From Piromyces finnis finn (taxonomy: Eukaryota; Fungi; Neocallimastigomycota): 64,000 bases of DNA. A model generated the notes under the pieces. The model was not told the origin of the DNA. It saw only the letters and a list, made by a program, of their open reading frames with translations, and ran no database searches. Below are positions 20,830-46,172 of this stretch, piece after piece. The position numbers and the translations under genes were made by a program. The stretch spans positions 1-64,000 of the forward strand of contig MCFH01000062.1 of the NCBI GenBank assembly GCA_002104945.1. The letters run 5' to 3'. Positions within the stretch are counted from its first letter, which is position 1. The number at the start of each line of letters is the position of its first letter.

Positions 20830-21945
<1,116 letters not shown>

Positions 21946-23636: not shown

Positions 23637-26600
23637 ATGAACAATACCAATTGTACTGTACCTACCTTACGACGTGGTCTTCGTTTCTTCGGATCTAACT
23701 CCAATAAATCATATCTAATTTTTATCCATGATCTTAGTTCATGGTCAAAACAACGACTAATGGAATTTCTTTTAAAGGACATTCAACCTTTCAATGATAT
23801 TCTTCAATCCCTCACCAAAAAATATTCACAATCACTCGGTATCTATTTCATTCTTAAAGTCAATGGAAAATGTCCGCTTAAAGCCATGTTACTTATACAC
23901 TCACTTTCTGAAAAACTCCCAATCTCTAGTAAAATATCTTGGAAATTCATTGATAAGCTCAAAAACAATAGATCATGCAAAAACAAACGATCTATCAAAT
24001 CTACTACTGGTCCACTCTCTGACGATTTCTATTTTAGTCATCTAAGCTCTAATGCTTCCTTTTTCAACTTATGTACTTGTTGGAACATCAATGGTTGGAA
24101 CCCGGAGAAAAAGGACGGTGTTTTATACTTCATCTCTGTTTTCAAACCTGTATGTGTCTGTCTTCAAGAAGTAGGTAACAGCCAATTCCTCTGTGGTAAT
24201 GCAATTTCCTCCCCATGCCTACCGAACTATAAACCAGTACACAGACGTGCTAATCCTAAAGTTCCAGGTATGAGAGGACTTTACATTGGTGTTCATAATT
24301 CTTGTTCCTTTACTCCTGAACCTCTTCTATATAAGTACATCATTTCAGTTACAATATTGTCATTTTGGAACCAGAGATGTACCATTGGTAATATTTACTT
24401 CCCGCAAACTAGATGGCCGGATGCTAGATTAATTGCCTTTGATGAACTTGATAAGTGGTTAACAACGCATAACAAATTCAACCACCCAGCTATCCTTGTA
24501 GGAGACTTTAATATGTCAGCTATTAAAATCAAATCTTATATATCACAACACTTCCCGGATTGGACTATGGCTGAGTTAACTGGTAATAATTTTACCTGGG
24601 AAAAAGGATCTAAATCTTCATGCATTGATCATATTATATACAACAAAGCTATGACAGAACACATAAACAAATCTTCAGTTTGTGAAGTTTTCCACGATGT
24701 TTCTGATCACAAACCGATCCTTGTGTCTTGTAAAAAAGACTCTTCGGATGGTTTCAAAAAGCCTAAGAAGACCTTTAAGTGGTCAAGTCATATCTGTAAC
24801 ACAAAGTGTTCTGACATTCTTACTAGTAATCGCTTTGCTGTTCTAGCTTCCGAGCTTGAAGCTAATTGTGATAGCCTTTCGGCTGACGATATGGTTTCAA
24901 GATTTTTAGATACTTCCAAAACTATAGGTAAAGAAATAAAAGCCATTGTGCCTGCAGATTTAAAAGGTCCAGCATTCCATTGCCCTCAATACATCAAAAA
25001 CTTATCACATGAAAAACACCTGGCTTACAAAAATATTAAGCCCCTTTCAGATTGCGCTGACATGGAAAATTATCTTAACCAGTTCTCCATATACCAAAAT
25101 CTATGTAATACCATCAAAAAGGTTAAGAGCAAATTCAGATCCAATCTCTATAAAGCTAATATTGTTTCTATCGGTAAACATTTTATTGATAAAAGCTTTA
25201 GACAAGGTTGGAAAGGCCTTAAAAAACTTGCCAAACCAAGTTATTCGTCCTCCCATGTTTCAACTATTAAGGACAAGAATGGCAAGGATTTATTTACTCC
25301 TCAAGAACAATTAAAACGTTGGGCTGAACATTATGAAAATCTTGCATCTGATGTTACAAATCACAGCTTAAATCGTGGTTACTGGGAAAGAGCCTTCCAA
25401 TTCAACCATATCAATCAAATAGCATGGGATATAAATGGTCCCATTTCTATTGAGGAAATTAGAAATGTTGTTCTGTCAATGAAGAATAACAAGGCTCCAG
25501 GTCCCGATGGTATCCCAATTGAATTTTTCAAAGCTTTCTTTTGTAACGAAGAACTGGAGAAAGAACATAAGTCTGCTGGAAATTGTCTTAAATTAATTTT
25601 TAATAAAATCTGGAATGGTTCCTTTCCTTTGAAATGGAACTCTGCTTCCATTGTTTCTATTCCAAAGAAAGGCGATCTCTCAGACTGTAATAATTATCGT
25701 GGTATTTCTCTCATCAATGTAGGTCTTAAAATTATTTCAAAAATTGTAACTAATAGAATTTCAAAGTATGCTCTTTCTCATAATTTTATAAGACCTGAGC
25801 AATTTGGTTTTCGCAATAAAGAAGAATGTATTAGCTTATTTATTTCCATTAGAGAAATCTGTCAAAGAAGGAAATTTAAAGGAAAAGCCACTTATGTCGC
25901 CTTTCTAGACCTTAAAAAAGCATACGACTCAGTTCCTATTTTTAATATCCTTACAAAGTTATATAAATTAGGTATACGTGGTAAATGTTTTGATTTTCTC
26001 AATAATCTCTACTCTACCTCTAAAGCTCGTGCACGTTTCTTGGATATGCTTTCCAATGAATTCCCTATAAACCGTGGTGTAAGACAAGGATGTCCTCTTT
26101 CTCCTATACTGTTTAACCTCTTTATCAATGATATTTTAAATAAATGTGAAAGGCTTGGAGTTAGCTTAGGTAATAAACGTTGTTGTGGTGGCCTTTTCGC
26201 TGATGACATTGTTTTGATTGCTCCTAGTAAGAAGAACCTTCAAAAGATGCTCAATCTAGTCCTTGATTGGGCTAATTTAAATGAAATGTCTTTTGGAATA
26301 AATAAATGTGCAACTATTGTTGTTAAACCTATCAACTTTAATAGATCCCCTAGTTATGTCGACCCAACATTTTACATCGGTATGTACTCGATTCCAAAGG
26401 TTTCTTGCTATACTTATCTTGGAATCCCATTCGACGAAGATCTTTCTTTGACTCCTATTCTGTCTAATATGTACAAAAAAGTTCAGAATTCTTTATTCTC
26501 TTTTAAGAACTTCCTCACCAACAATTGTGTTCCTATTGGCTTAAAAAACATAGTAATTCATTCTTATATTTTAAGCAAAGTCTCTTATTATGCTCCTTTG

Positions 26601-27936
26601 CTTGGTTCCAACAAAAATAGAACTAGAAGAGTCCAATCTCTTATCAATACTGCTGTTTTATGGAGTGTCAATAGCTTTCACAATAAAAGTTTTAATAACA
26701 AAGATTTTGTTTTTGAACGAAATTCATTTATTAGTCTGTATGCTCTTACAAGAGATATGAAGATCCCTACCCTTTCAGGTATTTGTGCTGCGCAACAAGT
26801 GAAATGCTTTGTTAAATGGAGAAAATCAAATTGTATAATTAAAAATCTCGTCCGATCTATTCCTCCCATGTCTCATTACTCTTGGGCCAAAGAATCTTGT
26901 TCACTACATAAGAAGCTTATGAAAATAAATATTAAAAGTACTAAAGATATTAGAGAATATTATTGGAATAATAGTAGCCTAAATAATGGAAGTAAAGCCC
27001 TCAGATATACTAACAACAAATTCCTTAATTCAAATCGCCTAATGCATATCGGTCTCAACAAACCTCACTTTAAATTTAGGAATTACCTGGATTATTCGTA
27101 TTCGATGCGGTTATGAAAATACTATCCGAATTGCTATTGTCAGTAATAGAGTTACTCCTGACTGCCCTCGTGTCTGTCCATGTTGCGGATTTGACGAACA
27201 ATCTTTTTACCATTGGATATTAGAATGTTCTGCATTCTCTGAATACAGAGCTTCTTCACTTAGCTTTATTGACGATCTTTTTACCCTTTTTTACAATAAA
27301 TATAAGAACCAATTCATCAAATACTTACTCCCTGAAATGGAAGTAAGAAAGACAATTTATAACTATATTTTTACGTTCCTTCTAGGTGGAACTTTAGCTT
27401 ATGATGAGCTACATATCGATAAGGCGGAACAAAGACATTTGAATGAACAGCTTTACAGTTCATCGGGGTCTCATGTTCCATATGTAGAGGGTCTCGCGGC
27501 TTTTCTTACTAAAACAATCCCTATCATTAGTAGCTCTATGAAGCTACTTTTTGATAGGTTTAGTAAGACACCTAACGTAATCAAGAGCGCCGACGTCGTA
27601 CCGATATGGCAAAGGAACATTTCCAATGTTCCGTACACAGGGTTCAATGTTAGTATTTCCTCAAATTCGAATGAAAACATTATGAACTCATGGGAGAGTT
27701 TAGTGGACACCACACTATCATACCTGATGTTACTTCTTTTTTTTATTTCATTTAATTTATTAGGTAGGGACCAATCCCACACAGTACAAATTGCAGAGTT
27801 CATTGAACTTTTATGCAACTTAAATAATTATTTTATATTTTTTTATATTTATATTTTTATTTATATATATTTTATTATTTTTATTTATTATTTATTATAT
27901 CATTATCAATATGTATTATCACCTAATATTATGTAA
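23637..27936 (+). CDS. LINE polyprotein (APE endonuclease, reverse transcriptase, CCHC zinc knuckle) with a +1 frameshift at about 27069-27071
   Basis: APE: WNING, LQEV, GDFN, IDH, SDH. RT: KAPGPDGIP, YRGISL, QFGFR, FLDLKKAYDSV, GVRQGCPLSP, LFADD. Removing one T (the 57-kb copy reads cacttaaat, here cactttaaat) continues the frame through CPCCG..HWILEC into the 27337 ORF. Confidence 0.9.
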
Positions 27937-33499: not shown

Positions 33500-36451
33500 T
33501 CAAACCATTTTGGATTTTCTTTTAAATGAGGTGACATGTCTAATAAAGTTAAAGTTACTACTTTCATTTATTCTGTTTGCTCCTGGACTGTCAACAATAC
33601 AATTAAAATATGGATAATTCATATTTATTTCGTTATATATATATATTTTTATATTCTCTTCATTGGGTGCTTTATTATTATTATTTTGAAAAAAGGTTTG
33701 CAAAGCATTTAAATACATTGTTCCTAAATTTTTAATTATTACATATATATCTTCTTTGGTATTATTATCAATGGATTTATTAGTATATCTATTCAATATA
33801 TTTTTAATTCTTTTCTTAAATTCATATTTATTTTCACCAAATAAGTAAAAAATTAGGTTATTAATTAATTTATATGATAATGTTAATCCATATAATCCAG
33901 AAATTTCAGTTATCATATTAACACCGTTAATAATAATGTTATTGATATCATTAGAATTTCTTATTTCGTTTTCATAAATTTTAATAATGGTATTTCCTCT
34001 ATTCATTTTTAATTCCAAATTAACTTTTTGTGATATAGATAATCCAATTGAGCCCATATTTTCATATGAAATTTCATCGAATGTAGTATTTATTAATTTT
34101 TCTAATATTTTTGGTTTAATTTCTGTTTTACTATTTTCTTTATTATAAACTCCTTGTACTCTGACTACATTTATTTCATAATTGAAAGATTCTCTAATAC
34201 TATTTTGTAAATGAACACAATCTGAAAGTTTAGTGATTATCGCAATCACTGGCATGTAGTTATGAAGCATTCTTATTAACTCTTCTTCCTCCTCCTCGAT
34301 CCATAATGTACAGTCTTCTATACAAATCCATGCAATATGAATCATTTCTCTTTCAATTTTATTTTTTTGGCGTTCATTAATTAATTTTTTAAGATCGCTT
34401 ATAATTTGTTTATAGTTCCTTTTTTCAGGACCATCAATATTAATTATTGAGAGAGGAATTTCTTCCTGTGAAATTTCTTGAATTTCATTTGTAATATTCT
34501 TTTTATTACCTAGAGTACCAAGTTTGTTGTAAAAAATGGAATCAATTAAAGTTTTTTTTCCTACACCTGTTTTACCTGCTATTAGAATATTAATTCTTTC
34601 TGTGTCTTTTTTGAATTTTTCAACGGCACTTTTAACTATTTTTGCTAGTTCAAAATCAATATCACTTGATATATTAATATTAATAATATCGTTAATGATA
34701 TTGCTTATTTCATCTTTTAATTTATTCGAATGATTAAACTTATCATCATTGCTTTCAGTTGTAAGTGAGGGCATACATGACTCACGCCTATAGGATGCCT
34801 TAGAATTGTTTTTCTTGAAATTATCATCATTACCTTCAGTTATAAATGAAGGCATACATGATTCTCGCCTATAGGATGCCTTAGAATTAATTTTCTTCAT
34901 TGGTGAATCAATTAAAAGGTTTTCAATTTTTTGATGTATAATATTATTTGTGAAATTCACTAATTCTATAAGATTTTTTGGTTTTATTTCGTAATCATTA
35001 ATCTTAACATATATAGATTGAACACGTATAACATTAATTTCCGGGAATAATTGATTAAATCTATTTCTTAATCCAGTATCAAATTCAAGTTTAGTAATTA
35101 CTACAATAACTGGCATATGTTCTATAAGCATTCTTATTAATTTTTTTTCGTTGGAATCAATAAATTGATTAGATTCTTCTTTACAAAGCCATGCAACACG
35201 AATACGCTTATTTGTATCGTTTTTTCTTTGTTTGATGAGTTGGTTATATTTTTCTATTTCGATATTTCCAGTAGTATCAATTATAGAAACTGGAATATTT
35301 TCAGTTGAATATTCTTTAATTTCATTTATAATTATATCTTCACTATGAATATCTGATAGACTTTTATCAAATATAGCTTTAATTAATGTACTTTTTCCTA
35401 CATTAGAATTACCAACTACTAAAATATTAATGTTGCCTATATCTTTTCTAAACTTATCTATTGGTTTTTCCGAAATATGGGAAAATATATTATTATTATT
35501 GTTTTGTATATTATTATTATTATTGGGTTTATTAACCTTAATTTCATCTAATTCAACTAAATTATTTTTTATCTCAGAAAACGCTAAATCTAAATTGAAA
35601 CTGTCACTATCACTACCACTTGAAAAGTCCAAATTTATATCATCATCATCATCATCTTCTTTTTCATTATCTAACGATATGTTTATTCCATTTTCTTCTT
35701 TTTCTTTTGATAAATCCAAGTTTATTTCAAAACTATCATTATCACTATCATTTTCACTATCACTTGAAAAGTCCAAATTTATATCATCATCATCTTCTTC
35801 TTCTTCTTCATCATCATTATCTAATGATATATTTATGCCATTTTCTTCTTTTTCTTTTGATAAATCCAAGTTTATTTCAAAACTATCATTATCACTATCA
35901 TTTTCACTATCACTTGAAAAGTCCAAATTTATATCATCATCATCATCTTCTTCTTCTTCATCATCATTATCTAATGATATATTTATGCCATTTTCTTCTT
36001 TTTCTTTTGATAAATCCAAGTTTATTTCAAAACTATCATTATCACTATCATTTTCACTATCACTTGAAAAGTCCAAATTTATATCATCATCATCTTCTTC
36101 TTCTTCTTCATCATCATTATCTAATGATATATTTATGCCATTTTCTTCTATTTCTTTTGATAAATCCAGGTTTATTTCAAAACTATCATCACTATCACTT
36201 TCACTACCACTTGAAAAGTCCAAATTTATATCATCATCCTCTTCTTCTTTTAATATATCTATTTTTATATTATATTTATTATCATAAGAATTTATATTTG
36301 TATCATTATAACTTTCATCGTTTGAAGAACACATTTCTATATTTTTTTCTTTTGAAAGTTCTATATCAGTATTCTCATTTGAGTTATTTTTCATATTATT
36401 ATCTATTTTTATTTTTGTTATATTATTATTTATTTTTGTAAGAAATTTCAT
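33500..36451 (-). CDS. GTPase array gene 1: acidic N-terminal repeats followed by two degenerate P-loop GTPase domains and a helical tail
   Basis: Intronless, 983 aa. Domain A: GNSNVGKST and DTTG, with the switch-I TG..PVT motif lost. Domain B: GKTGVGKKT, and NIDG in place of DxxG. Confidence 0.85.
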   Translation of the reverse strand: MKFLTKINNNITKIKIDNNMKNNSNENTDIELSKEKNIEMCSSNDESYNDTNINSYDNKYNIKIDILKEEEDDDINLDFSSGSESDSDDSFEINLDLSKEIEENGINISLDNDDEEEEEDDDDINLDFSSDSENDSDNDSFEINLDLSKEKEENGINISLDNDDEEEEDDDDDINLDFSSDSENDSDNDSFEINLDLSKEKEENGINISLDNDDEEEEEDDDDINLDFSSDSENDSDNDSFEINLDLSKEKEENGINISLDNEKEDDDDDDINLDFSSGSDSDSFNLDLAFSEIKNNLVELDEIKVNKPNNNNNIQNNNNNIFSHISEKPIDKFRKDIGNINILVVGNSNVGKSTLIKAIFDKSLSDIHSEDIIINEIKEYSTENIPVSIIDTTGNIEIEKYNQLIKQRKNDTNKRIRVAWLCKEESNQFIDSNEKKLIRMLIEHMPVIVVITKLEFDTGLRNRFNQLFPEINVIRVQSIYVKINDYEIKPKNLIELVNFTNNIIHQKIENLLIDSPMKKINSKASYRRESCMPSFITEGNDDNFKKNNSKASYRRESCMPSLTTESNDDKFNHSNKLKDEISNIINDIININISSDIDFELAKIVKSAVEKFKKDTERINILIAGKTGVGKKTLIDSIFYNKLGTLGNKKNITNEIQEISQEEIPLSIINIDGPEKRNYKQIISDLKKLINERQKNKIEREMIHIAWICIEDCTLWIEEEEEELIRMLHNYMPVIAIITKLSDCVHLQNSIRESFNYEINVVRVQGVYNKENSKTEIKPKILEKLINTTFDEISYENMGSIGLSISQKVNLELKMNRGNTIIKIYENEIRNSNDINNIIINGVNMITEISGLYGLTLSYKLINNLIFYLFGENKYEFKKRIKNILNRYTNKSIDNNTKEDIYVIIKNLGTMYLNALQTFFQNNNNKAPNEENIKIYIYNEINMNYPYFNCIVDSPGANRINESSNFNFIRHVTSFKRKSKMV
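35590..36260 (-). repeat. About 150-bp coding repeat (about 50-aa Asp/Glu/Ser-rich unit), motif present five times
   Basis: cacttgaaaagtcc occurs at 35617, 35761, 35911, 36061 and 36208. Confidence 0.93.
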
Positions 36452-37460
36452 ATATTAAATATTATTTAAAATATTTAATAGTATAATTATAAATATTATT
36501 TAATAATATTTAATACAACATGAATATTTTTTTTATGATAAACTTTTTTAATAATTTTTATGAAAAAATAAAATTATAATTATTGATATGTATTAATAAA
36601 ATGCAAATTATTGTAATATTTTCAACATTTATCATATATATTCATATATTAATATTATGTATCTAGGTTATTCATTTGAATAAATAACAATTTTAAAAAA
36701 CTCTAAATAATTATATAATTCACTTTAATATAATTATTTTAAATTGTTATAAAACTTATAATTTTCTTTATTATTATAAATACCATCTAAATTAAATATT
36801 TCCCATAGTAAAGTATTAAAAAATTATGGGTAAAAAGTTTAATAATTTTATATATTTATTTATAATTTATAAAAATAATGGGATTAAAACTAAAAGTAAA
36901 TTTTATAATAAAGTTAAAATTTATTTATTTTTATGCTTAAAATAAAAAAAAAATTTAAATAATATTTTTAATATAATCGATTATTTTATTTAAATTTGTT
37001 TTTTTAATAGCAAAAATTATTTATTATTATATTTAATTTTCATTTTTTATTTGGTTATATACAATTATACTTAAGATAATATTCTTTAGATTTATTTTTT
37101 ATTTATTATCATAGTATTAAAAACTTATTATAGAGATATAATTTTTTGATATTTCATAATTCTAAGATTTAAAATGATTTTATAATAATTATTTACATAT
37201 AATATCATTGCAATAGTATTGATTATGCAGTATTAAAATATTTAAAATAATAATTTTATAATATTAAAATATACTTTATCACAAATATATTGTATAAAAA
37301 TATTTATTTAAAATAAAAAGAAATATTATTATTATTATTATTTTTTTGCATTTATAAAAGTAAATTTATTTTCTATATAGTCAAAATGTTATAAATAAAC
37401 TGTATTTTTTTAAACGAAATAATTAGTTATTTATTATTTAAATATTTATATTATTATTTA

Positions 37461-38672
37461 TTATTGCTGCTTTTTTTGAAATACTTTCAAAATTTTGGAT
37501 TCTTTTCTTTTTCTTTGAGCTGGTTCTTTTGGCAATATTATTTCTGAATTATTATTTATCTTAGTTCTTAAACTAAATAGATTATGCACTTTACTGGATG
37601 GCATAAAAAGAGTTAGCCATTTCATTATATGTGATTTTTTTGTTTTCTTTGGTATGTCTTCATTTGATGAATGTTCACTTTCAGATGATTCCTCTGATGA
37701 ATAAAGTAAAGGTGTGGATTTAGATTCTTTTACTTTAAATAAATTTGGATTAGCTTTATTTTTTCGTTTATAATTTTCTATAGATTTTAAATATTCATTG
37801 CATATTAATTCTATTTCTTTTACAGTTAATTGTTCAATACATGATGTGTCATTCAAATTAATATCTGTTTTTTGTATATTTTTTAAGACTTCAAAAATTA
37901 AATCAAATTTAAAATTAAACCCTAAAAGTCCAGTAATATTGGTTATTATATTTATTAATGTTTCTTCGTTATTGATCTTTCCTTCTTCACATATTTTAAG
38001 ATTTTCTTCAATTATACTTTTTGCTTTCTCATTTTTAATATCTTCATTTACATATTGTTCAGATATAAATGTGTTTTTCTTTATATCTGATAGATTATTA
38101 TATGTAATTTCAGTAAGAGTATTTAGACCAGTAGGCTCTACTACATATCCATCATCCAATTCAATTCTTTTGGCATGAACACGAATGATATCTTTAGCTT
38201 TTGGACATAATTCTTTAATTTCATCCTTTAACCCTTGATCAAATAGTGCTTTTGTCAATATAATAATAACTGGAATACCTAATTCGGCTATAATATCTAC
38301 TAATTGTATTTCTGCTTCTTCAACTCTACTCGACCCTTCAACAATACATACCCATGCTATATCAATACTTTCACTATTATTATTTTTTCTTTCTTCAACA
38401 AAGCTTTTAATCTCTTCAAAAACATTCTCATAATTTTGAAGTACAATTCCTCTTGAATCATAAATTGAAATATTATTTTTAGTTATCTCAACCAGATGTT
38501 CTGTAACTGGTTTTCCTACACCTGTTTCTGCATAATCACCTTCAAAAAGTGAATTTATTAAAGTACTTTTACCAACACCAGTTTTACCAGCTATTAAAAT
38601 ATTAACACTTTTTAATTCATCATGATATTGTTTTATTTTATTATTTATGATATCTTCAAATGTTTCATTCAT
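37461..38672 (-). CDS. GTPase array gene 2: MMR_HSR1-like P-loop GTPase with a helical domain and a basic/Ser-rich tail
   Basis: Intronless, 403 aa: GKTGVGKST, TGVGKPVT, DSRG, AWVC, LTK. Confidence 0.88.
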   Translation of the reverse strand: MNETFEDIINNKIKQYHDELKSVNILIAGKTGVGKSTLINSLFEGDYAETGVGKPVTEHLVEITKNNISIYDSRGIVLQNYENVFEEIKSFVEERKNNNSESIDIAWVCIVEGSSRVEEAEIQLVDIIAELGIPVIIILTKALFDQGLKDEIKELCPKAKDIIRVHAKRIELDDGYVVEPTGLNTLTEITYNNLSDIKKNTFISEQYVNEDIKNEKAKSIIEENLKICEEGKINNEETLINIITNITGLLGFNFKFDLIFEVLKNIQKTDINLNDTSCIEQLTVKEIELICNEYLKSIENYKRKNKANPNLFKVKESKSTPLLYSSEESSESEHSSNEDIPKKTKKSHIMKWLTLFMPSSKVHNLFSLRTKINNNSEIILPKEPAQRKRKESKILKVFQKKQQ

Positions 38673-40030
38673 GACAATTTCTAATTTTTATTGTTTATTA
38701 TAAATGTAATAATAAAATTTTAGTAAAAAAAATTAATTGTAATGGATAAAGAAAATTAAATAAATAAAATAAAATTATTAAAAGAATTATTATCAACTAA
38801 ATTTTAAAACAATAAATTATATATATAGTTTATAATTTAAATTATATAATTCTTATATAAATGATTTATTAAAAGATATATATGTAGATTTTCATAAAAC
38901 AATTAAATTTAGAATTTAGAAATTATTTAATGTAATCTTATAAAATATCTAAATTTCTTTAAATATCATTAAATTCAAATACTTTATTCTTTTTATTAAT
39001 AACAATATTATTACAATAATAAAAAGAATTAGTGTATTTATAAGTAATAAATAATTTCAGATGACAAAAATAGTAAAATTTCAAAATATGTTTAATAAAA
39101 AATTGAAAAAAAAATAATGAATTAAAACGTATAACATAATTTTTATGGAAATGAAAATAATTTTATGTATATATAGGAAATGAAGAAAAATATATATTTT
39201 TGATATATACTATTATTATAATAGTCCTGGATTCAATATATCGGAGTTAAATTATAATGATAATAACGATAGTAATAATATTAATAGTAGCAATAATAAT
39301 AAAACATTCTGTTTTTTTAATTATTTATGAATTTTTGATTATTCCAAAATAGTAGCGATAAATTATAATAGTATTGATAAATTGATAAATTGATATGAAT
39401 TAAGCTAATTTAGTAAAGTTAAATAAATATAATAATATAATAACCTTTTAGTTAAAAAACTAATTTTTTTTTTAAATAATTCAAAATGGGTTAATATTTA
39501 TTTTGATAAAAAAAATACTTATTAAATACTTATTAAATTAAAAAGTTTAAAAAAAAAAATAAATATGGAAAAATTATATTTTGTATTTTATATAATACTA
39601 GATATTAATTATTTTTCTATTTTTATTTTTGATAAACTTTAAAAATTAAAGTTAAATTTACCAAAGAAATAAATTGAGAAAATAAATAGTCTTGGTAAAA
39701 GAAAAAATTTTAAATGAATATTATAATAAATAATATAAATAAAAACTATAATTATATATAGAAATCTTTATTTAAAAAACGTTTTGAATTTAAATATTTA
39801 TTTATTATATTTTTTTACTTTTTTCATTATTACATTGAAAAATTTTATAAATTACATATATATTATTAATTATTTATTTATTCTTAATTCTTAGGTTTCT
39901 ATAGTTTATATCTTAAAAAAATTTATATTTTAATAAATAATAATATTTATATTCATTAAAAATAAGATTTTAATATTATTAATAAAATTTTTTATAATTA
40001 AAAATATTAACATTTTTTATAAAATAAATT

Positions 40031-41152
40031 TTATTTATTATTGCCTGGTTTATATTCAGATCCTTTCTTTAATGTAGTAATTATATATTCTTTTATCTCA
40101 TATTCAGTAGGCATTTCTCCAAGTTTTGTTTTGAAAGCTTTAATGATGGTTAATAAGTATAATTCACCTATGTATCCAACTAATTCAGAGGCTTCCTCAC
40201 CTGTGACTTTATTATTTTTAGTAGCTGTTTTAGATTTCTTTTTATAAATACTTTTAATTATTTTCTTTAATCTTGAATCATTTTCACCAAATATTGTTTT
40301 TACAATGCTACTAACATATTCTTGATCTAAATTAATACCATATACACCTGAAATACTTGTTATCATACATACTATGTTATTAATTAATTCCTTATTTTTA
40401 GTAATTTCTTTTGATTCTTCCATTAAATATTTAATTATTTTCTGTACTTTTTCTTTCTTTAAGTCTAAAGAAACTTTTTGTGATGCAATGAATGCATTTT
40501 GTATTATTGGTATTATAATATTATTTGTAAGAAGAACCAATTCAATAAGATTTTTTGGTTTTATTTCATGTCCACCTTCTAATTTAATAGGTATTGATTG
40601 AACTCGCATGACATTCAAGTCTGGAAATGTTTCTTTAGCCTTTGCTTGTAATCCATTGTCAAATGTATAACATTTAGTAATTACTATAATAACTGGCATA
40701 TATTCTAATAACATTTTAATTAATTCTTCTTCTCCTTCTTCAATTCTTGCAGATCCTTCTGCTATACAAACCCATGCAACATGAAGATGTTTACGTATAT
40801 CAGAATTTGCCTTTCGATTCTCAACATACTCTTTAAGATCACCAATAATTTGATTATATTCTTTTAATTCAAGACCTTTTGAATCAATGATAGAAAGAGG
40901 CAAACCTTCTTTTGAAATTTCCGTAATTTCTTGAGTAACTGGTTTTCCTGTTCCTGTTTGTGCAAGATTATCATGGAATATAGAATTAATTAAAGTACTT
41001 TTTCCCACACCAGTTTTACCTGCTATTAAAATATTTACTTTTCCTATTTCATTTCTAAAACTTTTAATTGCATTTTCAACCATATCTGAATAATTATATG
41101 TGGTGGTAGAACTAACTGGTTCTACTTTATCTTCCATTTTATTATTATCCAT
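40031..41152 (-). CDS. GTPase array gene 3: P-loop GTPase resembling bacterial GTPase-DUF697 proteins
   Basis: Intronless, 373 aa: GKTGVGKST, TGTGKPVT, DSKG, HVAWVCI, ITK, AFIASQKVSLDLKK. Confidence 0.88.
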   Translation of the reverse strand: MDNNKMEDKVEPVSSTTTYNYSDMVENAIKSFRNEIGKVNILIAGKTGVGKSTLINSIFHDNLAQTGTGKPVTQEITEISKEGLPLSIIDSKGLELKEYNQIIGDLKEYVENRKANSDIRKHLHVAWVCIAEGSARIEEGEEELIKMLLEYMPVIIVITKCYTFDNGLQAKAKETFPDLNVMRVQSIPIKLEGGHEIKPKNLIELVLLTNNIIIPIIQNAFIASQKVSLDLKKEKVQKIIKYLMEESKEITKNKELINNIVCMITSISGVYGINLDQEYVSSIVKTIFGENDSRLKKIIKSIYKKKSKTATKNNKVTGEEASELVGYIGELYLLTIIKAFKTKLGEMPTEYEIKEYIITTLKKGSEYKPGNNK

Positions 41153-42360
41153 TATTGTTTATTCTTTGTGTAATATTTTATTATAGAAAAGCAATATAAA
41201 ATAAAACATGTAATAAAAAAATATAAATATAAATATAAATATAATATTAAGTTTATAAATTTAAATTATTTAAAAAATATAATTTATTAATATAATTTAT
41301 TTTAGAATCTTTTTATATTAGTTTTAAAAAATTATACTTTTAAATTGAATGATATACAATAAAAGTATATAATGTATGGGAGAATGTTATAAGTTAGTAA
41401 TACAAATTATTATTAATATTTATAATATATTTTTTATAAATAAATATTTTTTATTTTATGTTTATTAAAATACATATATGAAATGAATATTTTATTATAA
41501 ATATAAAATAATTTTAAATTACAGACTAACTTTTAAATCTTCTTTAATGTATGAGTAATTAATATTATTATTGTTCATTTCTTTTCTTTTCTTTTTTTTT
41601 TGTATAAATGTCATTGAAAAACTATTAATTGATACTTTTAATACTATTTTTGAAATAAATATTATTAGAAATAAAAATCATTATTATTTATTAATTAAAA
41701 ATAAGATTTTTATAAATATCTAGTTTATTTTATGATAAAACTAAAAATCATTAAAGTTATTATTAGTGAATTTATGTATTTATGTAAAATTATAAAACTA
41801 TTAATTATATAAAAACATTTTCTTTTATAATTAACAGAAGATATATTAAAGAATTAATTATAAATCCTATATTATATAACTTATAAATATATAACTTATA
41901 AATGTATTTATAGTTAATAAATACATTTTATTAACTATAAATACCCAACATTATAAAGTATTTATAATTACTTACAATTTATTTTAATTCATTACTTAAA
42001 TACTATTTTATTACTTTGATGATATAATAATATTTTGGAATTTGACTTTTTGGATATAAATAATTAAAAAAAATTTTTTTATTAAAAACTTCTTTGATAA
42101 AATTATATATAGAGATATTAATAAATAGTTATAAAATTCAATTTCATGGTGTATGTGTGTATGTATGTGTGTATTTGTAATATATTGACTCTTATAACTA
42201 ATAATAATATAATAAAATAAAAAAATAAAAAAAAAAAAAAAAACAATTCCAAAAAAAAATTATTAAATTCAACAATTTAATAATAATTTATTAAATTATT
42301 TGAAATATATTATTTATTATATTAATGGTAATTATTTTATTATTATATTTATATAAATTA

Positions 42361-44049
42361 TTATAATTTATTTTCATTAACAAACATTTCAGACCTTGAT
42401 ACACATATTTGAATTCCAATATTATTAATGGTACTTACAATATTATTTTTATCATTATTTAGTATTACTGATTTTTTAAAATATTTTTTTAATATTGGAA
42501 TATCATTTAATATAAATTTTATATTTTTATGTATATTATTCTTATCACTTTTATTATTTATCTTTATAGTATCAACAGTTTTTAAAAGATTGCCATCATT
42601 TAATTTAAATAATTCTTTAAAGTCTTCAAACATTTCATTTTTAATATTTTCCATTATTTCATGTGATTTTGATTCTTTTCTTATAAATGTTAAAACTGTT
42701 AATGATGCTATAGTATAATAATCAGTAATATAAAATCCTTGTTTCAATTTATTGTTAAATTCATTAGTACTTTCTGCGTCACACCATAAATCAATCATAT
42801 CTTCAAAGTTTTGAATATTATTATAAACTAAATTAAGTAATAAATCTTTCTTTAAAATACTTTTACAATTTATATCGCTTTTATTTATCATTTTACATAT
42901 TATTGATAAAATATTATAACAAATTATAAAAAAATTAATAGCAGTTTTCAATGTTTTTTCTATGTTAGTTTTTTTATCTTCAGTTTCTGATGAAATTTCA
43001 CCAATTTTTTCTTTTTTAATATTTGATAAACATTCTTCTTTGTTTCTTAATTTTATTGTACTAATAATTCTTTTTAAAATGTATTTCATTATTTCAAAAT
43101 TATTATTTGATAAATCAATAGTTGATGTATTTAATTGAATTTCACCCAAAAGAAATATATTTTTAATTTTATCTATGAAATCCTTATTAGGCTTTATGGA
43201 TTCTTCTATAAATGCTTGTAAAATTGTGATGATGAAATCAATTTTAATTTTATTTATATAATTTTTTATTTTAGTATTTGAATCAAGTGATAATGCAGTT
43301 GCCAAACTAATTGTATAATAACTTATTTTTCTTATAATATCTTCAATATTTACTGATTTATTTAATAAAATTTCATTAGAGATCGGTAGTTTTATGTTAC
43401 ATTCTTTTTTTTCGTTTTTATTATCGATGAATTCACTATGAAAAGTAACATAATTATCATTATTATCAATAGGAATTCCAAGAATTTCATTGGTATAATT
43501 TGTAAGTTTGGTTATATTTTTTGGTTTGATTTTATATCCATCCTCTAATGTTGTTTCTATGGAGTTAACATCAACAAATTTTTTTGCATTAGTACATATT
43601 TTTTCTATTTCTTTTAAAAAGTCTTGATTAAATAAAGACTTTGTTATTACAACAATAACCGGAACATACTTTGAAAGCATATTTACTAAATCTATTTCTA
43701 TATCTTCAACACGACCTGACCCTTCAGAAATACATACCCATGCAATATGAATATTCATATTCTTATCAATTATAGTTACATTTCTTTCATTTAAAAAATT
43801 TTTAATATTTTCAATAACCTCATCATAACTCTGTATTGTTACACCTTTCGTATCATAAAGCGAATATAGTTTATTTTCGATTGTATAATTTATAATATAT
43901 TCTGTTATTGGACTTCCTATGCCTGTTTGTGCAAGATCTTTATTAAGTACAGCATTTATTAAAGTACTTTTTCCAACACCTGTTTTTCCAACAACTAATA
44001 TGTTTATTTTTTCGAATTTGTTTTCTATAATATTATCTTTTTCTTCCAT
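42361..44049 (-). CDS. GTPase array gene 4: P-loop GTPase with an extended helical C-terminus
   Basis: Intronless, 562 aa: GKTGVGKST, TGIGSPIT, DTKG, HIAWVCI, ITK. Confidence 0.88.
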   Translation of the reverse strand: MEEKDNIIENKFEKINILVVGKTGVGKSTLINAVLNKDLAQTGIGSPITEYIINYTIENKLYSLYDTKGVTIQSYDEVIENIKNFLNERNVTIIDKNMNIHIAWVCISEGSGRVEDIEIDLVNMLSKYVPVIVVITKSLFNQDFLKEIEKICTNAKKFVDVNSIETTLEDGYKIKPKNITKLTNYTNEILGIPIDNNDNYVTFHSEFIDNKNEKKECNIKLPISNEILLNKSVNIEDIIRKISYYTISLATALSLDSNTKIKNYINKIKIDFIITILQAFIEESIKPNKDFIDKIKNIFLLGEIQLNTSTIDLSNNNFEIMKYILKRIISTIKLRNKEECLSNIKKEKIGEISSETEDKKTNIEKTLKTAINFFIICYNILSIICKMINKSDINCKSILKKDLLLNLVYNNIQNFEDMIDLWCDAESTNEFNNKLKQGFYITDYYTIASLTVLTFIRKESKSHEIMENIKNEMFEDFKELFKLNDGNLLKTVDTIKINNKSDKNNIHKNIKFILNDIPILKKYFKKSVILNNDKNNIVSTINNIGIQICVSRSEMFVNENKL

Positions 44050-45050
44050 TATATTATATTATATTATATTATATCATATATATATATCATATGCATTACA
44101 TTTAAATAAATATTGATTTATTAAGAATAGTTAATAAAAATAGTTTAAAATCCTACAACTAATAATGATACTTTTAAACTTTTTAATATTTTTTAGTATT
44201 AATAAAAATACATTTGTAAATTAATATTTAATATATTTATATATTTCAAATAGAGTTTGAATTATTAATTGTTATATTTTTAAAATAAGAATTATAAAAG
44301 TCGCTTTTATTAAATATTACTTCCTAAAAATACCTTAAGGTTTCTAAATATACAATATAATTATTTGTGTTATTTTTATTAATTATATATAATTTCAACT
44401 TAATTATTGTAGTTTGGTTATATTGATTTTGATAATTTGTAATTATAATATTAAATATTAATATTTTTAAATATTTTAAATTTAATTATTAATTTCTTAT
44501 GAAAATGAGAAAGTCCAATATACATTATTCATTTTATATTTAAAAATAATAAAAATCAAATATACATTTCACTATCTTTCAATATTTTCATTGAAAATTA
44601 GAAAAAATTACATATATTAAAATTATTATTTATAAGGAATACACATAATTAATAGTAATATTGTAACTAGTTTTTATTTATTGAAGTTTTTTTTTTTTTT
44701 TTTGAATTACTTTTTTATACTATTAATATTATATTTCAATTTAAAAATGTTGTTACCAAATTTATTATTAAAAATCTTACAAAAAGTTTAATTTTAAACT
44801 TTTTAAAATAATCTATACCATTAACTTTAAAATATTTTACAAATTTTAAAATTTATTTTTTTAAAAAAAAAAATATAACTATTTCTTTAGATTTACATTA
44901 AATAATTATTGTCAATTTTAAAATTATTTAAATCTATATTTAAATTATCACTATAAAATTTTATTATAAATATTTTTATTAATATTATATTTATTTTAAA
45001 CTTTGAATTATATAATTTCTATTTATGTTTTTCTTTAAAGGATATTATTT

Positions 45051-46172
45051 TTAATTAGTATTTAATTTCTCAGTACCTTTATTTAAAGTGTTAACAATAT
45101 ATTGCAAAATTTCACTTTCAGTAGGCATTTCTCCAAGTTTTGTTTTGAAAGATTTAATAATGGTTAATAAGTATAATTCACCTATGTATCCAACTAATTC
45201 AGAGGCTTCCTCACCTGTGACTTTATTATTTTTAGTAGCTGTTTTAGATTTCTTTTTATAAATACTTTTAATTATTTTCTTTAATCTTGAATCATTTTCA
45301 CCGAATATTATTTTTACAATATCGTTAACAAATTCCATTTTTAAATAGAAACCGTACACCCCAGAAATACTTGTTATCATATATACTATGTTATTAATCA
45401 ATTCTGAATTTTTAGTAATTCCTTTAGAATCTTTCATAAGATATTTAATTAAGCTTTCTGCTTGTTGTTTCTTTAAATCTAAAGAAACTTTTTGTGATGC
45501 AATGAATGCATTTTGTATTATTGGTATTATAATATTATTTGTAAGAAGAACCAATTCAACAAGATTTTTTGGTTTTATTTCATGTCCACCTTCTAATTTA
45601 ATAGGTATTGATTGAACTCGCATGACATTCAAGTCTGGAAATGTTTCTTTAGCCTTTGCTTGTAATCCATTGTCAAATGTATAACATTTAGTAATTACTA
45701 TAATAACTGGCATATATTCTAATAACATTTTAATTAATTCTTCTTCTCCTTCTTCAATTCTTGCAGATCCTTCTGCTATACAAACCCATGCAACATGAAG
45801 ATGTTTACGTATATCAGAATTTGCCTTTCGATTCTCAACATACTCTTTAAGATCACCAATAATTTGATTATATTCTTTTAATTCAAGACCTTTTGAATCA
45901 ATGATAGAAAGAGGCAAACCTTCTTTTGAAATTTCCGTAATTTCTTGAGTAACTGGTTTTCCTGTTCCTGTTTGTGCAAGATTATCATGGAATATAGAAT
46001 TAATTAAAGTACTTTTTCCCACACCAGTTTTACCTGCTATTAAAATATTTACTTTTCCTATTTCACTTCTAAAACTTTTAATTGCATTTTCTACTATATT
46101 TGAATAATTGCTTGTAGAAGTATCACTTTTTTCTGGTGACTCTTCAATTTTTAATGTTGGATTATCACTCAT
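45051..46172 (-). CDS. GTPase array gene 5: recent paralogue of gene 3
   Basis: Intronless, 373 aa. The GTPase domain is identical to gene 3 except for one I/V change. Confidence 0.88.
   Translation of the reverse strand: MSDNPTLKIEESPEKSDTSTSNYSNIVENAIKSFRSEIGKVNILIAGKTGVGKSTLINSIFHDNLAQTGTGKPVTQEITEISKEGLPLSIIDSKGLELKEYNQIIGDLKEYVENRKANSDIRKHLHVAWVCIAEGSARIEEGEEELIKMLLEYMPVIIVITKCYTFDNGLQAKAKETFPDLNVMRVQSIPIKLEGGHEIKPKNLVELVLLTNNIIIPIIQNAFIASQKVSLDLKKQQAESLIKYLMKDSKGITKNSELINNIVYMITSISGVYGFYLKMEFVNDIVKIIFGENDSRLKKIIKSIYKKKSKTATKNNKVTGEEASELVGYIGELYLLTIIKSFKTKLGEMPTESEILQYIVNTLNKGTEKLNTN

What the first reader, a model, noticed from the sequence alone, without database searches (positions are those of the whole stretch)
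33500..46172. Tandem array of five intronless bacterial-type GTPase genes: candidate laterally acquired, immune-like GTPase system in a gut fungus
Seen: five co-oriented intronless genes (six GTPase domains) share NIL(I/V)xGKTGVGKST, TG.G.P(V/I)T, DxxG, H.AW.CI and TK motifs, while flanking native genes are intron-rich. Recalled: this signature, with AF.A.QKV.LDLKK, resembles bacterial MMR_HSR1 + DUF697 (YcjF-like) GTPases, which are membrane-associated. Inference: one horizontal acquisition was amplified and diversified in place, giving intact members, a degenerate member, and variable C-terminal helical domains. This organisation parallels animal IRG/GBP/GIMAP immune GTPase clusters. I know of no description of such a locus in Neocallimastigomycota.
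Basis: partly seen in the sequence, partly recalled or inferred. Interest (0 to 1): 0.82.

Follow-up and report, generated by a model that had tools for sequence, protein, structure and literature searches.

The report
Bacterial-origin GTPase gene array in gut fungus
An anaerobic gut fungus (Piromyces finnis) carries five neighbouring GTPase genes that most likely came from gut spirochaete bacteria, then multiplied and lost the membrane-embedded character of their tail domain; nothing tested here shows that they act in immunity.

Summary
Five co-oriented, uninterrupted minus-strand ORFs (33500-46172) carry six GTPase domains, and the window holds no further copies.

They are full-length homologues of bacterial "YcjF family" GTPase+DUF697 proteins (34-39% identity, E about 1e-66 to 1e-57). 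In ML trees all AT-rich fungal-type copies form one clade (100/100). That clade lies inside a supported clade (96/99) of bacterial sequences; the four groups I traced come from Treponema or Spirochaetales contigs. Codon composition matches the fungal neighbours, so the transfer is old.

A second AT-rich contig carries orthologues of the G4, G3/5 and G2 types in the same order, so the array predates that split.

Two findings are new here:
- The bacterial C-terminal domain is hydrophobic, while the fungal one is charged and no longer matches Pfam DUF697.
- G3 and G5 share an exact 505-nt tract, which indicates gene conversion.

The immune-like reading is not supported. dN/dS is below 1 outside the disordered N-terminus, paralogues are conserved across fungi, PADLOC gives only P-loop hits, and the likeness to IRG proteins vanishes when the helical domain is searched alone. 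Transcription is likely but unproven. The scan also noted a similar gene pair elsewhere in this genome (s1-173737, untested).

The parts
45051..46172 (-). G5: 373-aa GTPase plus helical (ex-DUF697) domain. All family-invariant residues are kept. It is 88% identical to G3.
42361..44049 (-). G4: 562-aa GTPase. The G-domain motifs are intact, but the canonical C-domain residues are lost and replaced by a roughly 340-aa lineage-specific extension.
   Evidence: Its orthologue, gene A of L035 (P0332), is 51% identical over the full length.
40031..41152 (-). G3: 373-aa GTPase plus helical domain. It corresponds to the partial P. finnis model BCR36DRAFT_337112. AF2 pLDDT 90.2.
37461..38672 (-). G2: 403-aa GTPase plus a divergent helical domain with a basic/Ser-rich tail. 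Its orthologue, gene D of L035, is 55% identical.
33500..36451 (-). G1: 983-aa protein with two degenerate G domains. It consists of an acidic repeat region, G1a, a linker, then G1b with a helical domain.
35610..36249 (-). 4.3 copies of a 150-bp (50-aa) acidic D/E/S-rich repeat at 95% identity, in the N-terminal part of G1.
   Evidence: translation
34907..35440 (-). G1a G domain (about aa 338-515). The P-loop reads GNSNVGKST and DxxG is kept. Switch I is lost (G67H, G69E, P71I, T73I in G3 numbering). No helical domain follows it.
33503..34618 (-). G1b G domain plus helical domain (about aa 612-983). The P-loop reads GKTGVGKKT (Ser->Lys) and the Walker-B Asp is Asn, so it is predicted to be catalytically dead.
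40547..41051 (-). Exact 505-nt identity with 45561-46065 in G5. This gene-conversion tract covers most of the G domain. The flanking parts of the genes have dS of 0.2-0.8.
45561..46065 (-). The G5 partner of the 505-nt conversion tract.

Best explanation
The locus is a tandem family of bacterial-origin GTPases in the anaerobic gut fungus Piromyces finnis.

Origin. An ancestor of several gut-fungal genera acquired one gene of the bacterial 'YcjF family'. This family has a septin/EngB-like TRAFAC G domain fused to a membrane-embedded DUF697 domain. The donor was most probably a gut spirochaete of the Treponema kind.

Later history. The gene took on fungal base composition and duplicated into distinct paralogue types (G2-, G3/5-, G4- and double-domain G1-like). 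These types are kept in order in at least one other fungal contig. G3 and G5 are still being homogenised by gene conversion. During this history the C-terminal domain changed from a hydrophobic, Ala/Gly-rich domain to a charged helical bundle. G4 gained a new long tail, and G1 became a double pseudo-GTPase with an acidic repeat.

Inferred mechanism (not shown). G2, G3, G4 and G5 bind and hydrolyse GTP as dimerisation-activated GTPases. They have a hydrophobic residue after DxxG, as in Era, EngB and septins. The helical domain is the output module and now acts in the cytosol or peripherally on membranes. The inactive G1 serves as a partner or scaffold in hetero-oligomers. The cellular role is unknown. 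The bacterial neighbourhood hints at a stress or membrane-related origin rather than ribosome biogenesis.
For: Homology:
- The best non-fungal hits are bacterial YcjF/DUF697 GTPases at 34-39% identity in the full-length alignment, about 90% coverage and E 1e-66 to 1e-57.
- The end-to-end alignment shares family motifs, including TKxxxD and the C-terminal GE.YI...PT.

Origin:
- In the quick ML tree of 142 rows, the 22 fungal-type rows form one clade (SH-aLRT 100) inside a 39-row clade (99).
- In the careful tree of 77 rows, the fungal clade has 100/100 support and the fungal+spirochaete clade 96/99.
- Members of that bacterial clade were traced to named taxa. The P0056 cluster holds 'YcjF family protein [Treponema sp.]'. 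Neighbours on the P0020-cluster contig are identical to Treponema sp. MAG proteins. Neighbours on the P0067 contig are >=90% identical to Spirochaetales MAG proteins.
- A fungal-only profile finds spirochaete-clade proteins as its first bacterial hits. No other eukaryote appears in the best 120.
- Atlas neighbour clusters are 96-100% Bacteria.

Residence in the fungal genome:
- GC3 of the five genes is 0.11-0.15, against 0.13-0.14 for the neighbouring subtilase and phosphoesterase and 0.18-0.35 for the spirochaete-clade homologues (L033, L039, L040, L041).
- Intergenic GC is 10-11%.
- A LINE and fungal CAZyme genes lie in the flanks.

Age and conservation:
- Contig L035 (GC 17.5%) carries G4-, G3-, G2- and G3/5-like genes at 51-77% identity in the same order.
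- Orpinomyces sp. homologues exist.

Domain change:
- The C-domain has GRAVY +0.89, 9% charged and 30% Ala+Gly residues in 69 bacterial proteins.
- In 11 fungal proteins it has GRAVY -0.56 to +0.15, 23-35% charged and 4-11% Ala+Gly. G domains are alike in both groups.
- Pfam DUF697 scores 41-44 bits in the spirochaete-clade proteins P0056 and P0067 and gives no hit in G3.

Fold: pLDDT is 90.2. The G domain matches YsxC/EngB (Z 17.4) and septins (Z about 17).

Gene conversion and purifying selection.

Catalytic residues.

Likely transcription: contigs of transcript size cover G2, G3 and part of G4. Depths are unequal (45, 74-143 and 11) and the intergenic DNA is almost uncovered.
Against: - No biochemical or cellular datum exists for this family in any organism, so the mechanism is pure inference.
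- The run kinds are only guessed to be RNA. AT-rich spacers also break DNA assemblies.
- Fungal rows have long branches and deviant composition, as the tree tool warned, so the exact sister group is less certain than the bacterial origin. The grouping with Treponema has only 83/90 support.
- Only two gut-fungal genera are named among the hits. The other 'fungal-type' sequences are assigned by AT-rich composition and by synteny, not by a marker gene.
- Absence from other eukaryotes rests on the best 120 rows of two capped searches.
- Loss of hydrophobicity could partly reflect AT-driven loss of Ala/Gly codons. However, the G domain of the same genes did not shift.
Confidence: 0.75

Rival explanations
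1. The array is a cell-autonomous immune-like system, analogous to animal IRG, GBP or GIMAP clusters. Active paralogues would attack or mark membranes of invaders such as bacteria, viruses or mycoparasites. The pseudo-GTPase G1 would regulate them, as GMS IRGs regulate GKS IRGs.
For: - Tandem multi-paralogue organisation with a degenerate member.
- Foldseek's top PDB hits for the whole G3 model are IRG proteins (Irga6, Irgb6, Irgb10, GM4951; E 7e-9, TM about 0.5). VIA gives Z 16-17 over 274-285 residues spanning both domains.
- In another fungal-type contig, an 811-aa LRR protein lies between two family members.
- In bacteria the gene recurs next to a WYL-type regulator. From my own knowledge, WYL regulators often accompany stress or defence modules.
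Against: - Paralogue types and their order are conserved between two fungi at 51-77% identity. This is not a birth-and-death pattern.
- G3 and G5 are homogenised by conversion. Their variable helical segments have dN/dS of 0.2-0.5.
- The helical domain searched alone has no IRG match (Foldseek E >= 1; best VIA Z 6.0, within noise).
- By sequence profile, septins and EngA rank above IRGB10, which matches only the N-terminal 77 positions.
- Pfam IIGP is not hit, and AIG1 and Septin stay under their cutoffs.
- PADLOC gives only weak P-loop-region matches.
- There are no expression data under challenge.
Confidence: 0.1
2. The genes are vertically inherited fungal or eukaryotic GTPases, for example a divergent septin, GIMAP or Toc-like lineage. 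Their similarity to bacterial proteins would then reflect ancient common ancestry.
For: The G domain is septin/EngB-like in fold and weakly matches the Septin, AIG1 and Dynamin_N models. The genes have fully fungal composition.
Against: - Full-length identity of 34-39% to bacterial YcjF-family proteins includes the C-terminal domain. Solved septin chains reach only E about 1e-3 for G3 alone and 1e-7 for the family profile.
- The fungal clade is nested inside one bacterial subclade with starred support.
- No eukaryote other than gut fungi appears among the best 120 hits of either search.
Confidence: 0.03
3. The array is bacterial contamination or an assembly artefact in the fungal genome.
For: It is bacterial-type and intronless, and only one partial gene model (BCR36DRAFT_337112) is visible under a source name.
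Against: - GC3 of 0.11-0.15 and 10-11% GC spacers are typical of the fungus. The spirochaete-clade homologues have GC3 of 0.18-0.35.
- The five genes sit between a LINE, dockerin/CBM genes and a subtilase on one sequence.
- Independent AT-rich contigs from other samples carry orthologous arrays.
- Independent public runs hold the sequence.
Confidence: 0.01

Closest known systems
Bacterial 'YcjF family' GTPase-DUF697 proteins (Pfam MMR_HSR1 PF01926 + DUF697 PF05128), e.g. Treponema sp. MGP1512284.1 and the Synechocystis and Nodosilinea proteins
   Same: They are collinear over the full length at 34-39% identity. They share the P-loop NILxxGKTGVGKSTLIN, the GxGxPVT switch I, H(V/I)AW(V/I)CIxE, ITKxxxD and AQKV, and have a similar size of about 360-375 aa. 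The fungal clade nests inside this family.
   Different: The fungal C-terminal domain is charged rather than hydrophobic and no longer matches PF05128. The fungal genes form multi-paralogue arrays with double-domain, pseudo-GTPase and long-tailed members. In the bacterial contexts examined, the gene was solitary except for one tandem pair. The bacterial family itself has no known function.
E. coli YcjF (DUF697 inner-membrane protein) with the YcjX NTPase
   Same: It shares the DUF697 domain with the bacterial relatives of the array. The pairing of an NTPase with DUF697 is the same idea, in trans rather than in cis. PMC3041696 reports ycjX-ycjF adjacency, a sigma-32 promoter and loose linkage to psp operons.
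   Different: YcjF has no G domain. YcjX's relation to this G domain was not tested. The window proteins do not match DUF697 by HMM.
Immunity-related GTPases (IRG/p47: Irga6/IIGP1, Irgb6, Irgb10)
   Same: A G domain is followed by an all-helical domain of similar size. These are the only solved structures that align over both domains (Z 16-17, 274-285 residues, rmsd 4.3-5.0 A). IRG genes also lie in tandem clusters that include members with a non-canonical P-loop (my own knowledge of IRG biology).
   Different: Identity is 13-16% and there is no Pfam IIGP hit. The helical domain alone does not retrieve IRGs. The Z-score is no higher than for G-domain-only matches. The model has only one N-terminal helix before the G domain. 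No immune function or induction has been shown.
Septins and EngB/YsxC (TrmE-Era-EngA-YihA-septin-like TRAFAC GTPases)
   Same: These are the best structural neighbours of the G domain: YsxC Z 17.4 over 160 residues and septins Z about 17 over 173-183 residues. They are also the best profile hits among solved chains, with septins at 1e-7. A hydrophobic residue follows DxxG.
   Different: There is no septin unique element or coiled coil. G4 reads TKxxxD rather than the usual (N/T)KxD spacing. The Pfam Septin score stays below its cutoff (22-25 against 26.2 bits).
Catalogued bacterial-to-fungus gene transfers in Neocallimastigomycota (Murphy et al. preprint, 10.1101/487215)
   Same: The pattern is the same: donors are gut bacteria (Spirochaetes are named among the four main donor phyla), acquisition preceded genus diversification, and the genes have taken on fungal composition.
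   Different: In my text searches, that paper's main text and its one held supplement do not contain 'GTPase', 'GTP-binding', 'DUF697', 'unknown function' or 'hypothetical'. Its full event tables are not held, so prior listing cannot be excluded.

Membership tests
Bacterial YcjF-family GTPase-DUF697 | N-terminal TRAFAC G domain matching Pfam MMR_HSR1 above the gathering score | tested here: met
   All five proteins score 38.7-60.1 bits against a cutoff of 21.9. G1 matches in two stretches.
Bacterial YcjF-family GTPase-DUF697 | Family-specific invariant residues (P-loop GKTGVGKST, switch-I GxGxPVT, D90/G93, AW.CI.E..R, TK...D, QK) | tested here: met
   G2, G3 and G5 keep essentially all of them. 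G4 keeps the G-domain set only. G1a and G1b are degenerate.
Bacterial YcjF-family GTPase-DUF697 | C-terminal domain recognised as Pfam DUF697 (PF05128) | tested here: not met
   No DUF697 hit for any window protein at E <= 0.01, nor for the G3 C-domain at E <= 1. The spirochaete-clade proteins P0067 and P0056 score 43.9 and 41.5 bits against a cutoff of 27.7. Homology of the domain is still shown by the end-to-end alignment.
Bacterial YcjF-family GTPase-DUF697 | Hydrophobic, Ala/Gly-rich C-terminal segments capable of spanning a membrane | tested here: not met
   The maximum 19-residue Kyte-Doolittle mean is 1.0-1.3 in fungi (1.74 in one protein), against 1.61-2.23 in 69 bacterial proteins. 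Charged residues are 23-35% against 9%.
Bacterial YcjF-family GTPase-DUF697 | Phylogenetic placement inside the family | tested here: met
   The fungal clade is nested in a bacterial subclade, with support of 99 (quick tree) and 96/99 (careful tree).
IRG / p47 immunity-related GTPases | Match to Pfam IIGP (PF05049) | tested here: not met
   Not among the hits at E <= 0.01 for any window protein. Treponema P0056 gives only E 0.069 over 27 residues.
IRG / p47 immunity-related GTPases | G domain embedded in an IRG-type helical domain (fold-level match of both parts) | tested here: inconclusive
   The whole model gives Foldseek E 7e-9 with TM about 0.5 and rmsd 8.6 A, and VIA Z 16-17 over 274-285 residues. 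The helical domain alone has no IRG match.
IRG / p47 immunity-related GTPases | Induction by infection, or action on pathogen-containing membranes | not testable with these tools
   The single read-laying run gave only contigs of runs whose RNA/DNA kind is not on record.
Septin / AIG1 (GIMAP, Toc) families | Pfam Septin or AIG1 match above the gathering score | tested here: not met
   Septin scores 22-24.9 bits against 26.2, and AIG1 scores 20-24.4 bits against 27. The matches are mostly to the P-loop end.
Known prokaryotic anti-phage defence proteins (PADLOC-DB v2) | Full-length match to a defence-system model | tested here: not met
   Only LeoBC (E 1e-8 to 6e-6, about 80 residues of a 601-position model) and mad8 (E about 1e-5) match, for the window proteins and the spirochaete-clade proteins P0067 and P0056 alike.
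Horizontally acquired gene families of Neocallimastigomycota | Nearest relatives are bacterial, the fungal copies are monophyletic within donors, more than one gut-fungal genus has them, and other eukaryotes lack them | tested here: met
   (Piromyces finnis and Orpinomyces sp. are named). Absence from other eukaryotes is shown only within the best 120 rows of each search.

The most novel reading that the evidence does not exclude
A bacterial membrane GTPase captured by gut fungi has been rebuilt into a soluble, multi-paralogue GTPase system. It would have active members (G2-G5) and a pseudo-GTPase regulator (G1). It would work as a eukaryotic cell-autonomous surveillance or defence machine, convergent with animal IRG/GIMAP clusters, possibly together with LRR proteins.
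Probability: 0.1. Interest if true: 0.85.

Novelty: new variant of a known kind. Interest (0 to 1): 0.5.

Why it matters
The transfers discussed in the text of the gut-fungal catalogue I read (10.1101/487215) are metabolic; 'GTPase' does not occur there. This case is a signalling or mechanical protein, a GTPase of a widespread but uncharacterised bacterial family. It was captured, kept for a long time, multiplied into conserved paralogue types and structurally remodelled, with its membrane domain turned into a soluble helical domain.

It matters in three ways:
- It offers a natural experiment on how a prokaryotic membrane GTPase is domesticated in a eukaryotic cytoplasm.
- It offers a soluble, probably easier-to-purify entry point to the biochemistry of the unknown YcjF/DUF697 GTPase family.
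- It points to a specific ecological donor link between gut spirochaetes and gut fungi.

It does not, on present evidence, reveal a fungal immune system.

Tried and rejected
- NCBIfam gave only sub-threshold hits to Der, YlqF, EngB, Era and HydF, so no equivalog assignment is possible.
- PADLOC gave no defence-system membership.
- The phmmer search of G3 against PDB sequences matched only the P-loop regions of septins and YlqF.
- IRG homology was considered because of the Foldseek ranking. I rejected it as a family assignment after the domain-alone search and the profile search.
- Positive selection between G3 and G5 was rejected. The pattern is a conversion mosaic (dS = 0 over 505 nt, dS 0.2-0.8 elsewhere) with dN/dS below 1, except for about 1 in the disordered N-terminus.
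- Compositional attraction as the cause of the spirochaete sister group was considered. Flavobacterial homologues are more N/K/I-rich (0.27-0.30) than the Treponema-clade ones (0.24-0.28), yet they do not attract the fungal clade. It is therefore unlikely but not excluded.
- Literature searches for DUF697+GTPase, YcjF/YcjX, IRG bacterial origins and gut-fungal GTPase transfers found nothing on this family in fungi.
- The large representative search was not run. Its library has no taxonomy, so it could not answer the 'absent from other eukaryotes' question.

Full report
**What is there.**
Between 33500 and 46172 the minus strand carries five long ORFs. They are G1 (33500-36451, 983 aa), G2 (37461-38672, 403 aa), G3 (40031-41152, 373 aa), G4 (42361-44049, 562 aa) and G5 (45051-46172, 373 aa). 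Spacers of 1.0-1.4 kb with 10-11% GC separate them.

All five hit Pfam MMR_HSR1 above its cutoff, and G1 hits it twice. tblastn with all six domains finds nothing else in the window. The quoted motifs are present.

G3 and G5 are 88% identical. All other pairs are 24-41% identical. The window is very AT-rich. G3 corresponds to the partial model BCR36DRAFT_337112 of Piromyces finnis.

**What family they belong to.**
A word search with G3 returned about 1,100 hits. The first were AT-rich fungal-type sequences, including Orpinomyces sp. models. After those came hundreds of bacterial proteins of 357-390 aa, annotated 'YcjF family protein' or 'DUF697 domain-containing protein'. These carry Pfam MMR_HSR1 + DUF697 and have about 90% coverage and E 1e-66 to 1e-57.

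In the alignment, fungal and bacterial proteins match end to end at 34-39% identity to G3. They share the P-loop block, GxGxPVT, H(V/I)AW(V/I)CIxE..R.E, ITKxxxD, AQKV and a C-terminal GE.YI...PT motif.

NCBIfam offers only sub-threshold ribosome-GTPase matches. The ESM Atlas neighbours are 96-100% bacterial clusters of the same architecture.

**Origin.**
I used amino-acid composition to flag fungal-type rows, taking N+K+I+Y+F >= 0.35 as the criterion.

- The quick ML tree of 142 rows puts all 22 such rows, including the six window domains, in one clade (SH-aLRT 100) on a long stem. That clade lies inside a 39-row clade (99) whose other 17 members are bacterial.
- The careful tree of 77 rows (LG+C20 PMSF, ultrafast bootstrap / SH-aLRT) gives 100/100 for the fungal clade and 96/99 for fungal plus that bacterial clade. 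The fungal clade sits beside the Treponema rows at 83/90.

I then identified members of the bacterial clade:

- The 90% cluster of P0056 contains 'MAG: YcjF family protein [Treponema sp.]'.
- The contig of the P0020 cluster has pyruvate kinase, Ddl and acyl-CoA ligase identical to Treponema sp. MAG proteins, and MurD within a 90%-identity cluster of them.
- The P0067 contig has GatB, iPGM and UvrA that are >=90% identical to Spirochaetales MAG proteins.
- A profile built from fungal sequences alone retrieves these spirochaete-clade proteins as its first bacterial hits (E about 1e-106). It finds no eukaryote other than gut fungi in its best 120 rows.

More N/K/I-rich flavobacterial homologues do not attract the fungal clade. 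Simple compositional attraction is therefore unlikely.

The genes are resident fungal genes. Their GC3 is 0.11-0.15, like the neighbouring subtilase (0.134) and metallophosphoesterase (0.136). The spirochaete-clade homologues have GC3 of 0.18-0.35. The flanks hold GH11+CBM1 xylanases, a LINE, a dockerin-bearing SASA esterase, a subtilase and a phosphoesterase.

I conclude that a gut spirochaete-like donor passed one gene to a gut-fungal ancestor, and that the transfer is old. Bacterial origin and a single acquisition are well supported. The precise sister group is less certain, because the tree tool warned of long, compositionally deviant fungal branches.

**History after transfer.**
An independent 15-kb AT-rich contig (L035, GC 17.5%) carries five family members:

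| L035 gene | Window counterpart | Identity |
|---|---|---|
| A | G4 | 51% over the full length, including the long tail |
| B | G3 | 77% |
| C (opposite strand) | no counterpart in the window | 47% to G3/G5 |
| D | G2 | 55% |
| E | G3/G5 | 73% |

The order G4-G3-(C)-G2 is the same as in the window. The paralogue types and their arrangement therefore predate the split of these two fungi. This is long-term retention, not rapid turnover.

Orpinomyces sp. has at least four members, two of them with double domains. Another fungal-type locus has GTPase - LRR protein - double GTPase.

G3 and G5 share an exact 505-nt tract (40547-41051 = 45561-46065) covering most of the G domain. The rest of the genes has dS of 0.2-0.8. 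This is the signature of gene conversion. In the variable helical segments dN/dS is 0.2-0.5. It is about 1 only in the low-confidence N-terminus.

**Remodelling of the proteins.**
In 69 bacterial members, the C-terminal domain is Ala/Gly-rich and hydrophobic:
- GRAVY +0.89
- 9% charged residues
- 30% Ala+Gly
- best 19-residue hydropathy 1.6-2.2

In 11 fungal members the same aligned region differs sharply:
- GRAVY -0.56 to +0.15
- 23-35% charged residues
- 4-11% Ala+Gly
- best 19-residue hydropathy 1.0-1.3, apart from one protein at 1.74

The G domains of the two groups have nearly the same composition. Accordingly, Pfam DUF697 scores 41-44 bits in the spirochaete-clade proteins P0056 and P0067 (residues 210-362 of P0067). 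It gives nothing in the window proteins. The 'membrane-associated' attribute thus applies to the donors, not evidently to the fungal proteins.

Other remodelling:

- G4 keeps every G-domain motif. It has lost the conserved C-domain residues and carries a roughly 340-aa tail with only two relatives, both fungal-type.
- G1 has 4.3 copies of a 50-aa acidic repeat.
- G1a, the first G domain of G1, lacks switch I (T73I and neighbours) and has no helical domain.
- G1b, the second G domain of G1, has P-loop Ser->Lys and Walker-B Asp->Asn.
- Both halves of G1 are therefore predicted to be catalytically impaired. Yet the 2.9-kb ORF is intact in DNA of about 24% GC, which argues for retained function.

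**Structure.**
AlphaFold2 with an 80-sequence alignment gives a confident model of G3 (pLDDT 90.2, pTM 0.86). It has one N-terminal helix, a G domain (about 39-212) and a six-helix C-domain (215-364).

The G domain is closest to YsxC/EngB (Z 17.4) and septins (Z about 17). The family profile finds septins best among solved chains, at 1e-7.

Foldseek ranks IRG proteins first for the whole model (E 7e-9, TM about 0.5, rmsd 8.6 A). VIA aligns them over both domains (Z 16-17, 274-285 residues). These Z values do not exceed those of G-domain-only matches. The C-domain modelled alone (pLDDT 81.5) has no significant PDB match at all (Foldseek E >= 1; best VIA Z 6.0, within the noise for helical proteins). 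The IRG likeness is therefore an architectural resemblance, a G domain plus an appended helical domain. It is not evidence of membership.

**Expression and introns.**
Two public runs hold the sequence, but their kind is only guessed to be RNA. In run X1, one 1,524-nt contig lies gap-free over all of G2. Three contigs cover G3 with short flanks. One 1,533-nt contig covers part of G4. Word depths are 45, 74-143 and 11. Several intergenic bins have zero or near-zero depth.

This looks like unspliced transcripts at different levels. Breaks in a DNA assembly at AT-rich repeats cannot be excluded.

The claimed contrast with intron-rich flanks is weak. The adjacent subtilase, phosphoesterase and GH11 genes are also single ORFs, and I confirmed only one short intron, in the SASA esterase.

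**Function.**
Nothing is known experimentally about the GTPase-DUF697 family. E. coli YcjF, which is DUF697 only, is paired with the NTPase YcjX. It lies in a sigma-32-linked unit loosely associated with psp operons (PMC3041696).

In the bacterial contexts I read, the gene is mostly solitary. One case is a tandem pair. It recurs next to a WYL-domain regulator (Robertkochia and the Spirochaetales contig) and a small DUF1232 protein (Robertkochia and Treponema).

My working model, which is inferred and not shown:

- G2-G5 are nucleotide-dependent dimerising GTPases of the Era/EngB/septin type, with Leu after DxxG.
- Their helical domain is the effector. It is now soluble or peripherally membrane-binding.
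- G1 is an inactive partner.

I put the immune-like reading at about 0.1. It is not excluded, but every test available here came out neutral or negative.

**Novelty.**
Bacterial gene transfer into Neocallimastigomycota is well documented, with Spirochaetes among the main donors (10.1101/487215). My searches of that preprint's text and its one held supplement, and of a Piromyces E2 study, found no occurrence of 'GTPase', 'GTP-binding' or 'DUF697'. Other searches found nothing either. The preprint's full event tables are not held, so a bare listing cannot be ruled out.

The new elements are the family itself, its conserved multi-paralogue arrays, the conversion of the membrane domain into a soluble one, and the pseudo-GTPase member.

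The scan has a first-reader note of a similar intron-bearing pair elsewhere in this genome (s1-173737) and one on G1 as a double pseudo-GTPase (s1-176981). I did not test the first. My residue check partly agrees with the second.

Noticed in passing
L001:2457-3440 and 5890-6273; L033:8377-9402; L039:9170-9580: In distant bacteria (Robertkochia, a Spirochaetales MAG contig, Treponema), the GTPase-DUF697 gene recurs next to a WYL-domain regulator upstream and/or a small DUF1232 protein downstream. This may be a conserved stress module.
   Followed up: partly
L042:1078-12295 (same layout in L043): Another AT-rich fungal-type contig has a 562-aa family member, an 811-aa LRR protein on the opposite strand and a 764-aa double-domain member that still gives a weak DUF697 hit.
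   Followed up: no
L041:1420-3574: Two bacterial paralogues (P0059, 363 aa, and P0062, 343 aa) lie head to tail 32 nt apart. Tandem duplication of this gene therefore also occurs in bacteria of the donor clade.
   Followed up: no
window 34740-34897: An 81-bp unit repeated twice (88% identity) encodes the linker between the two G domains of G1 (NSKASYRRESCMPS...).
   Followed up: no
window 20830-21945: A SASA-type carbohydrate esterase with two CBM10 dockerins is split into two ORFs by a roughly 48-nt intron. It is the only intron verified in the flanks.
   Followed up: partly
window 363-4445 and 7131-8414: Two GH11 xylanase genes with C-terminal CBM1 lie on opposite strands. The first is a 1,360-aa ORF with much higher GC (0.38) than its surroundings.
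   Followed up: no
window 23637-27116: An intact 1,159-aa LINE ORF2 (endonuclease plus reverse transcriptase) with GC3 of 0.29, well above the host genes.
   Followed up: no
P0337, P0343-P0350: Bacterial double-G-domain relatives (577-667 aa, e.g. Nostoc commune) match Pfam IIGP (33.6 bits against a cutoff of 24 for P0337, two stretches, best covering about 60 residues). This may be worth a look for the deep origin of IRG-type G domains.
   Followed up: partly
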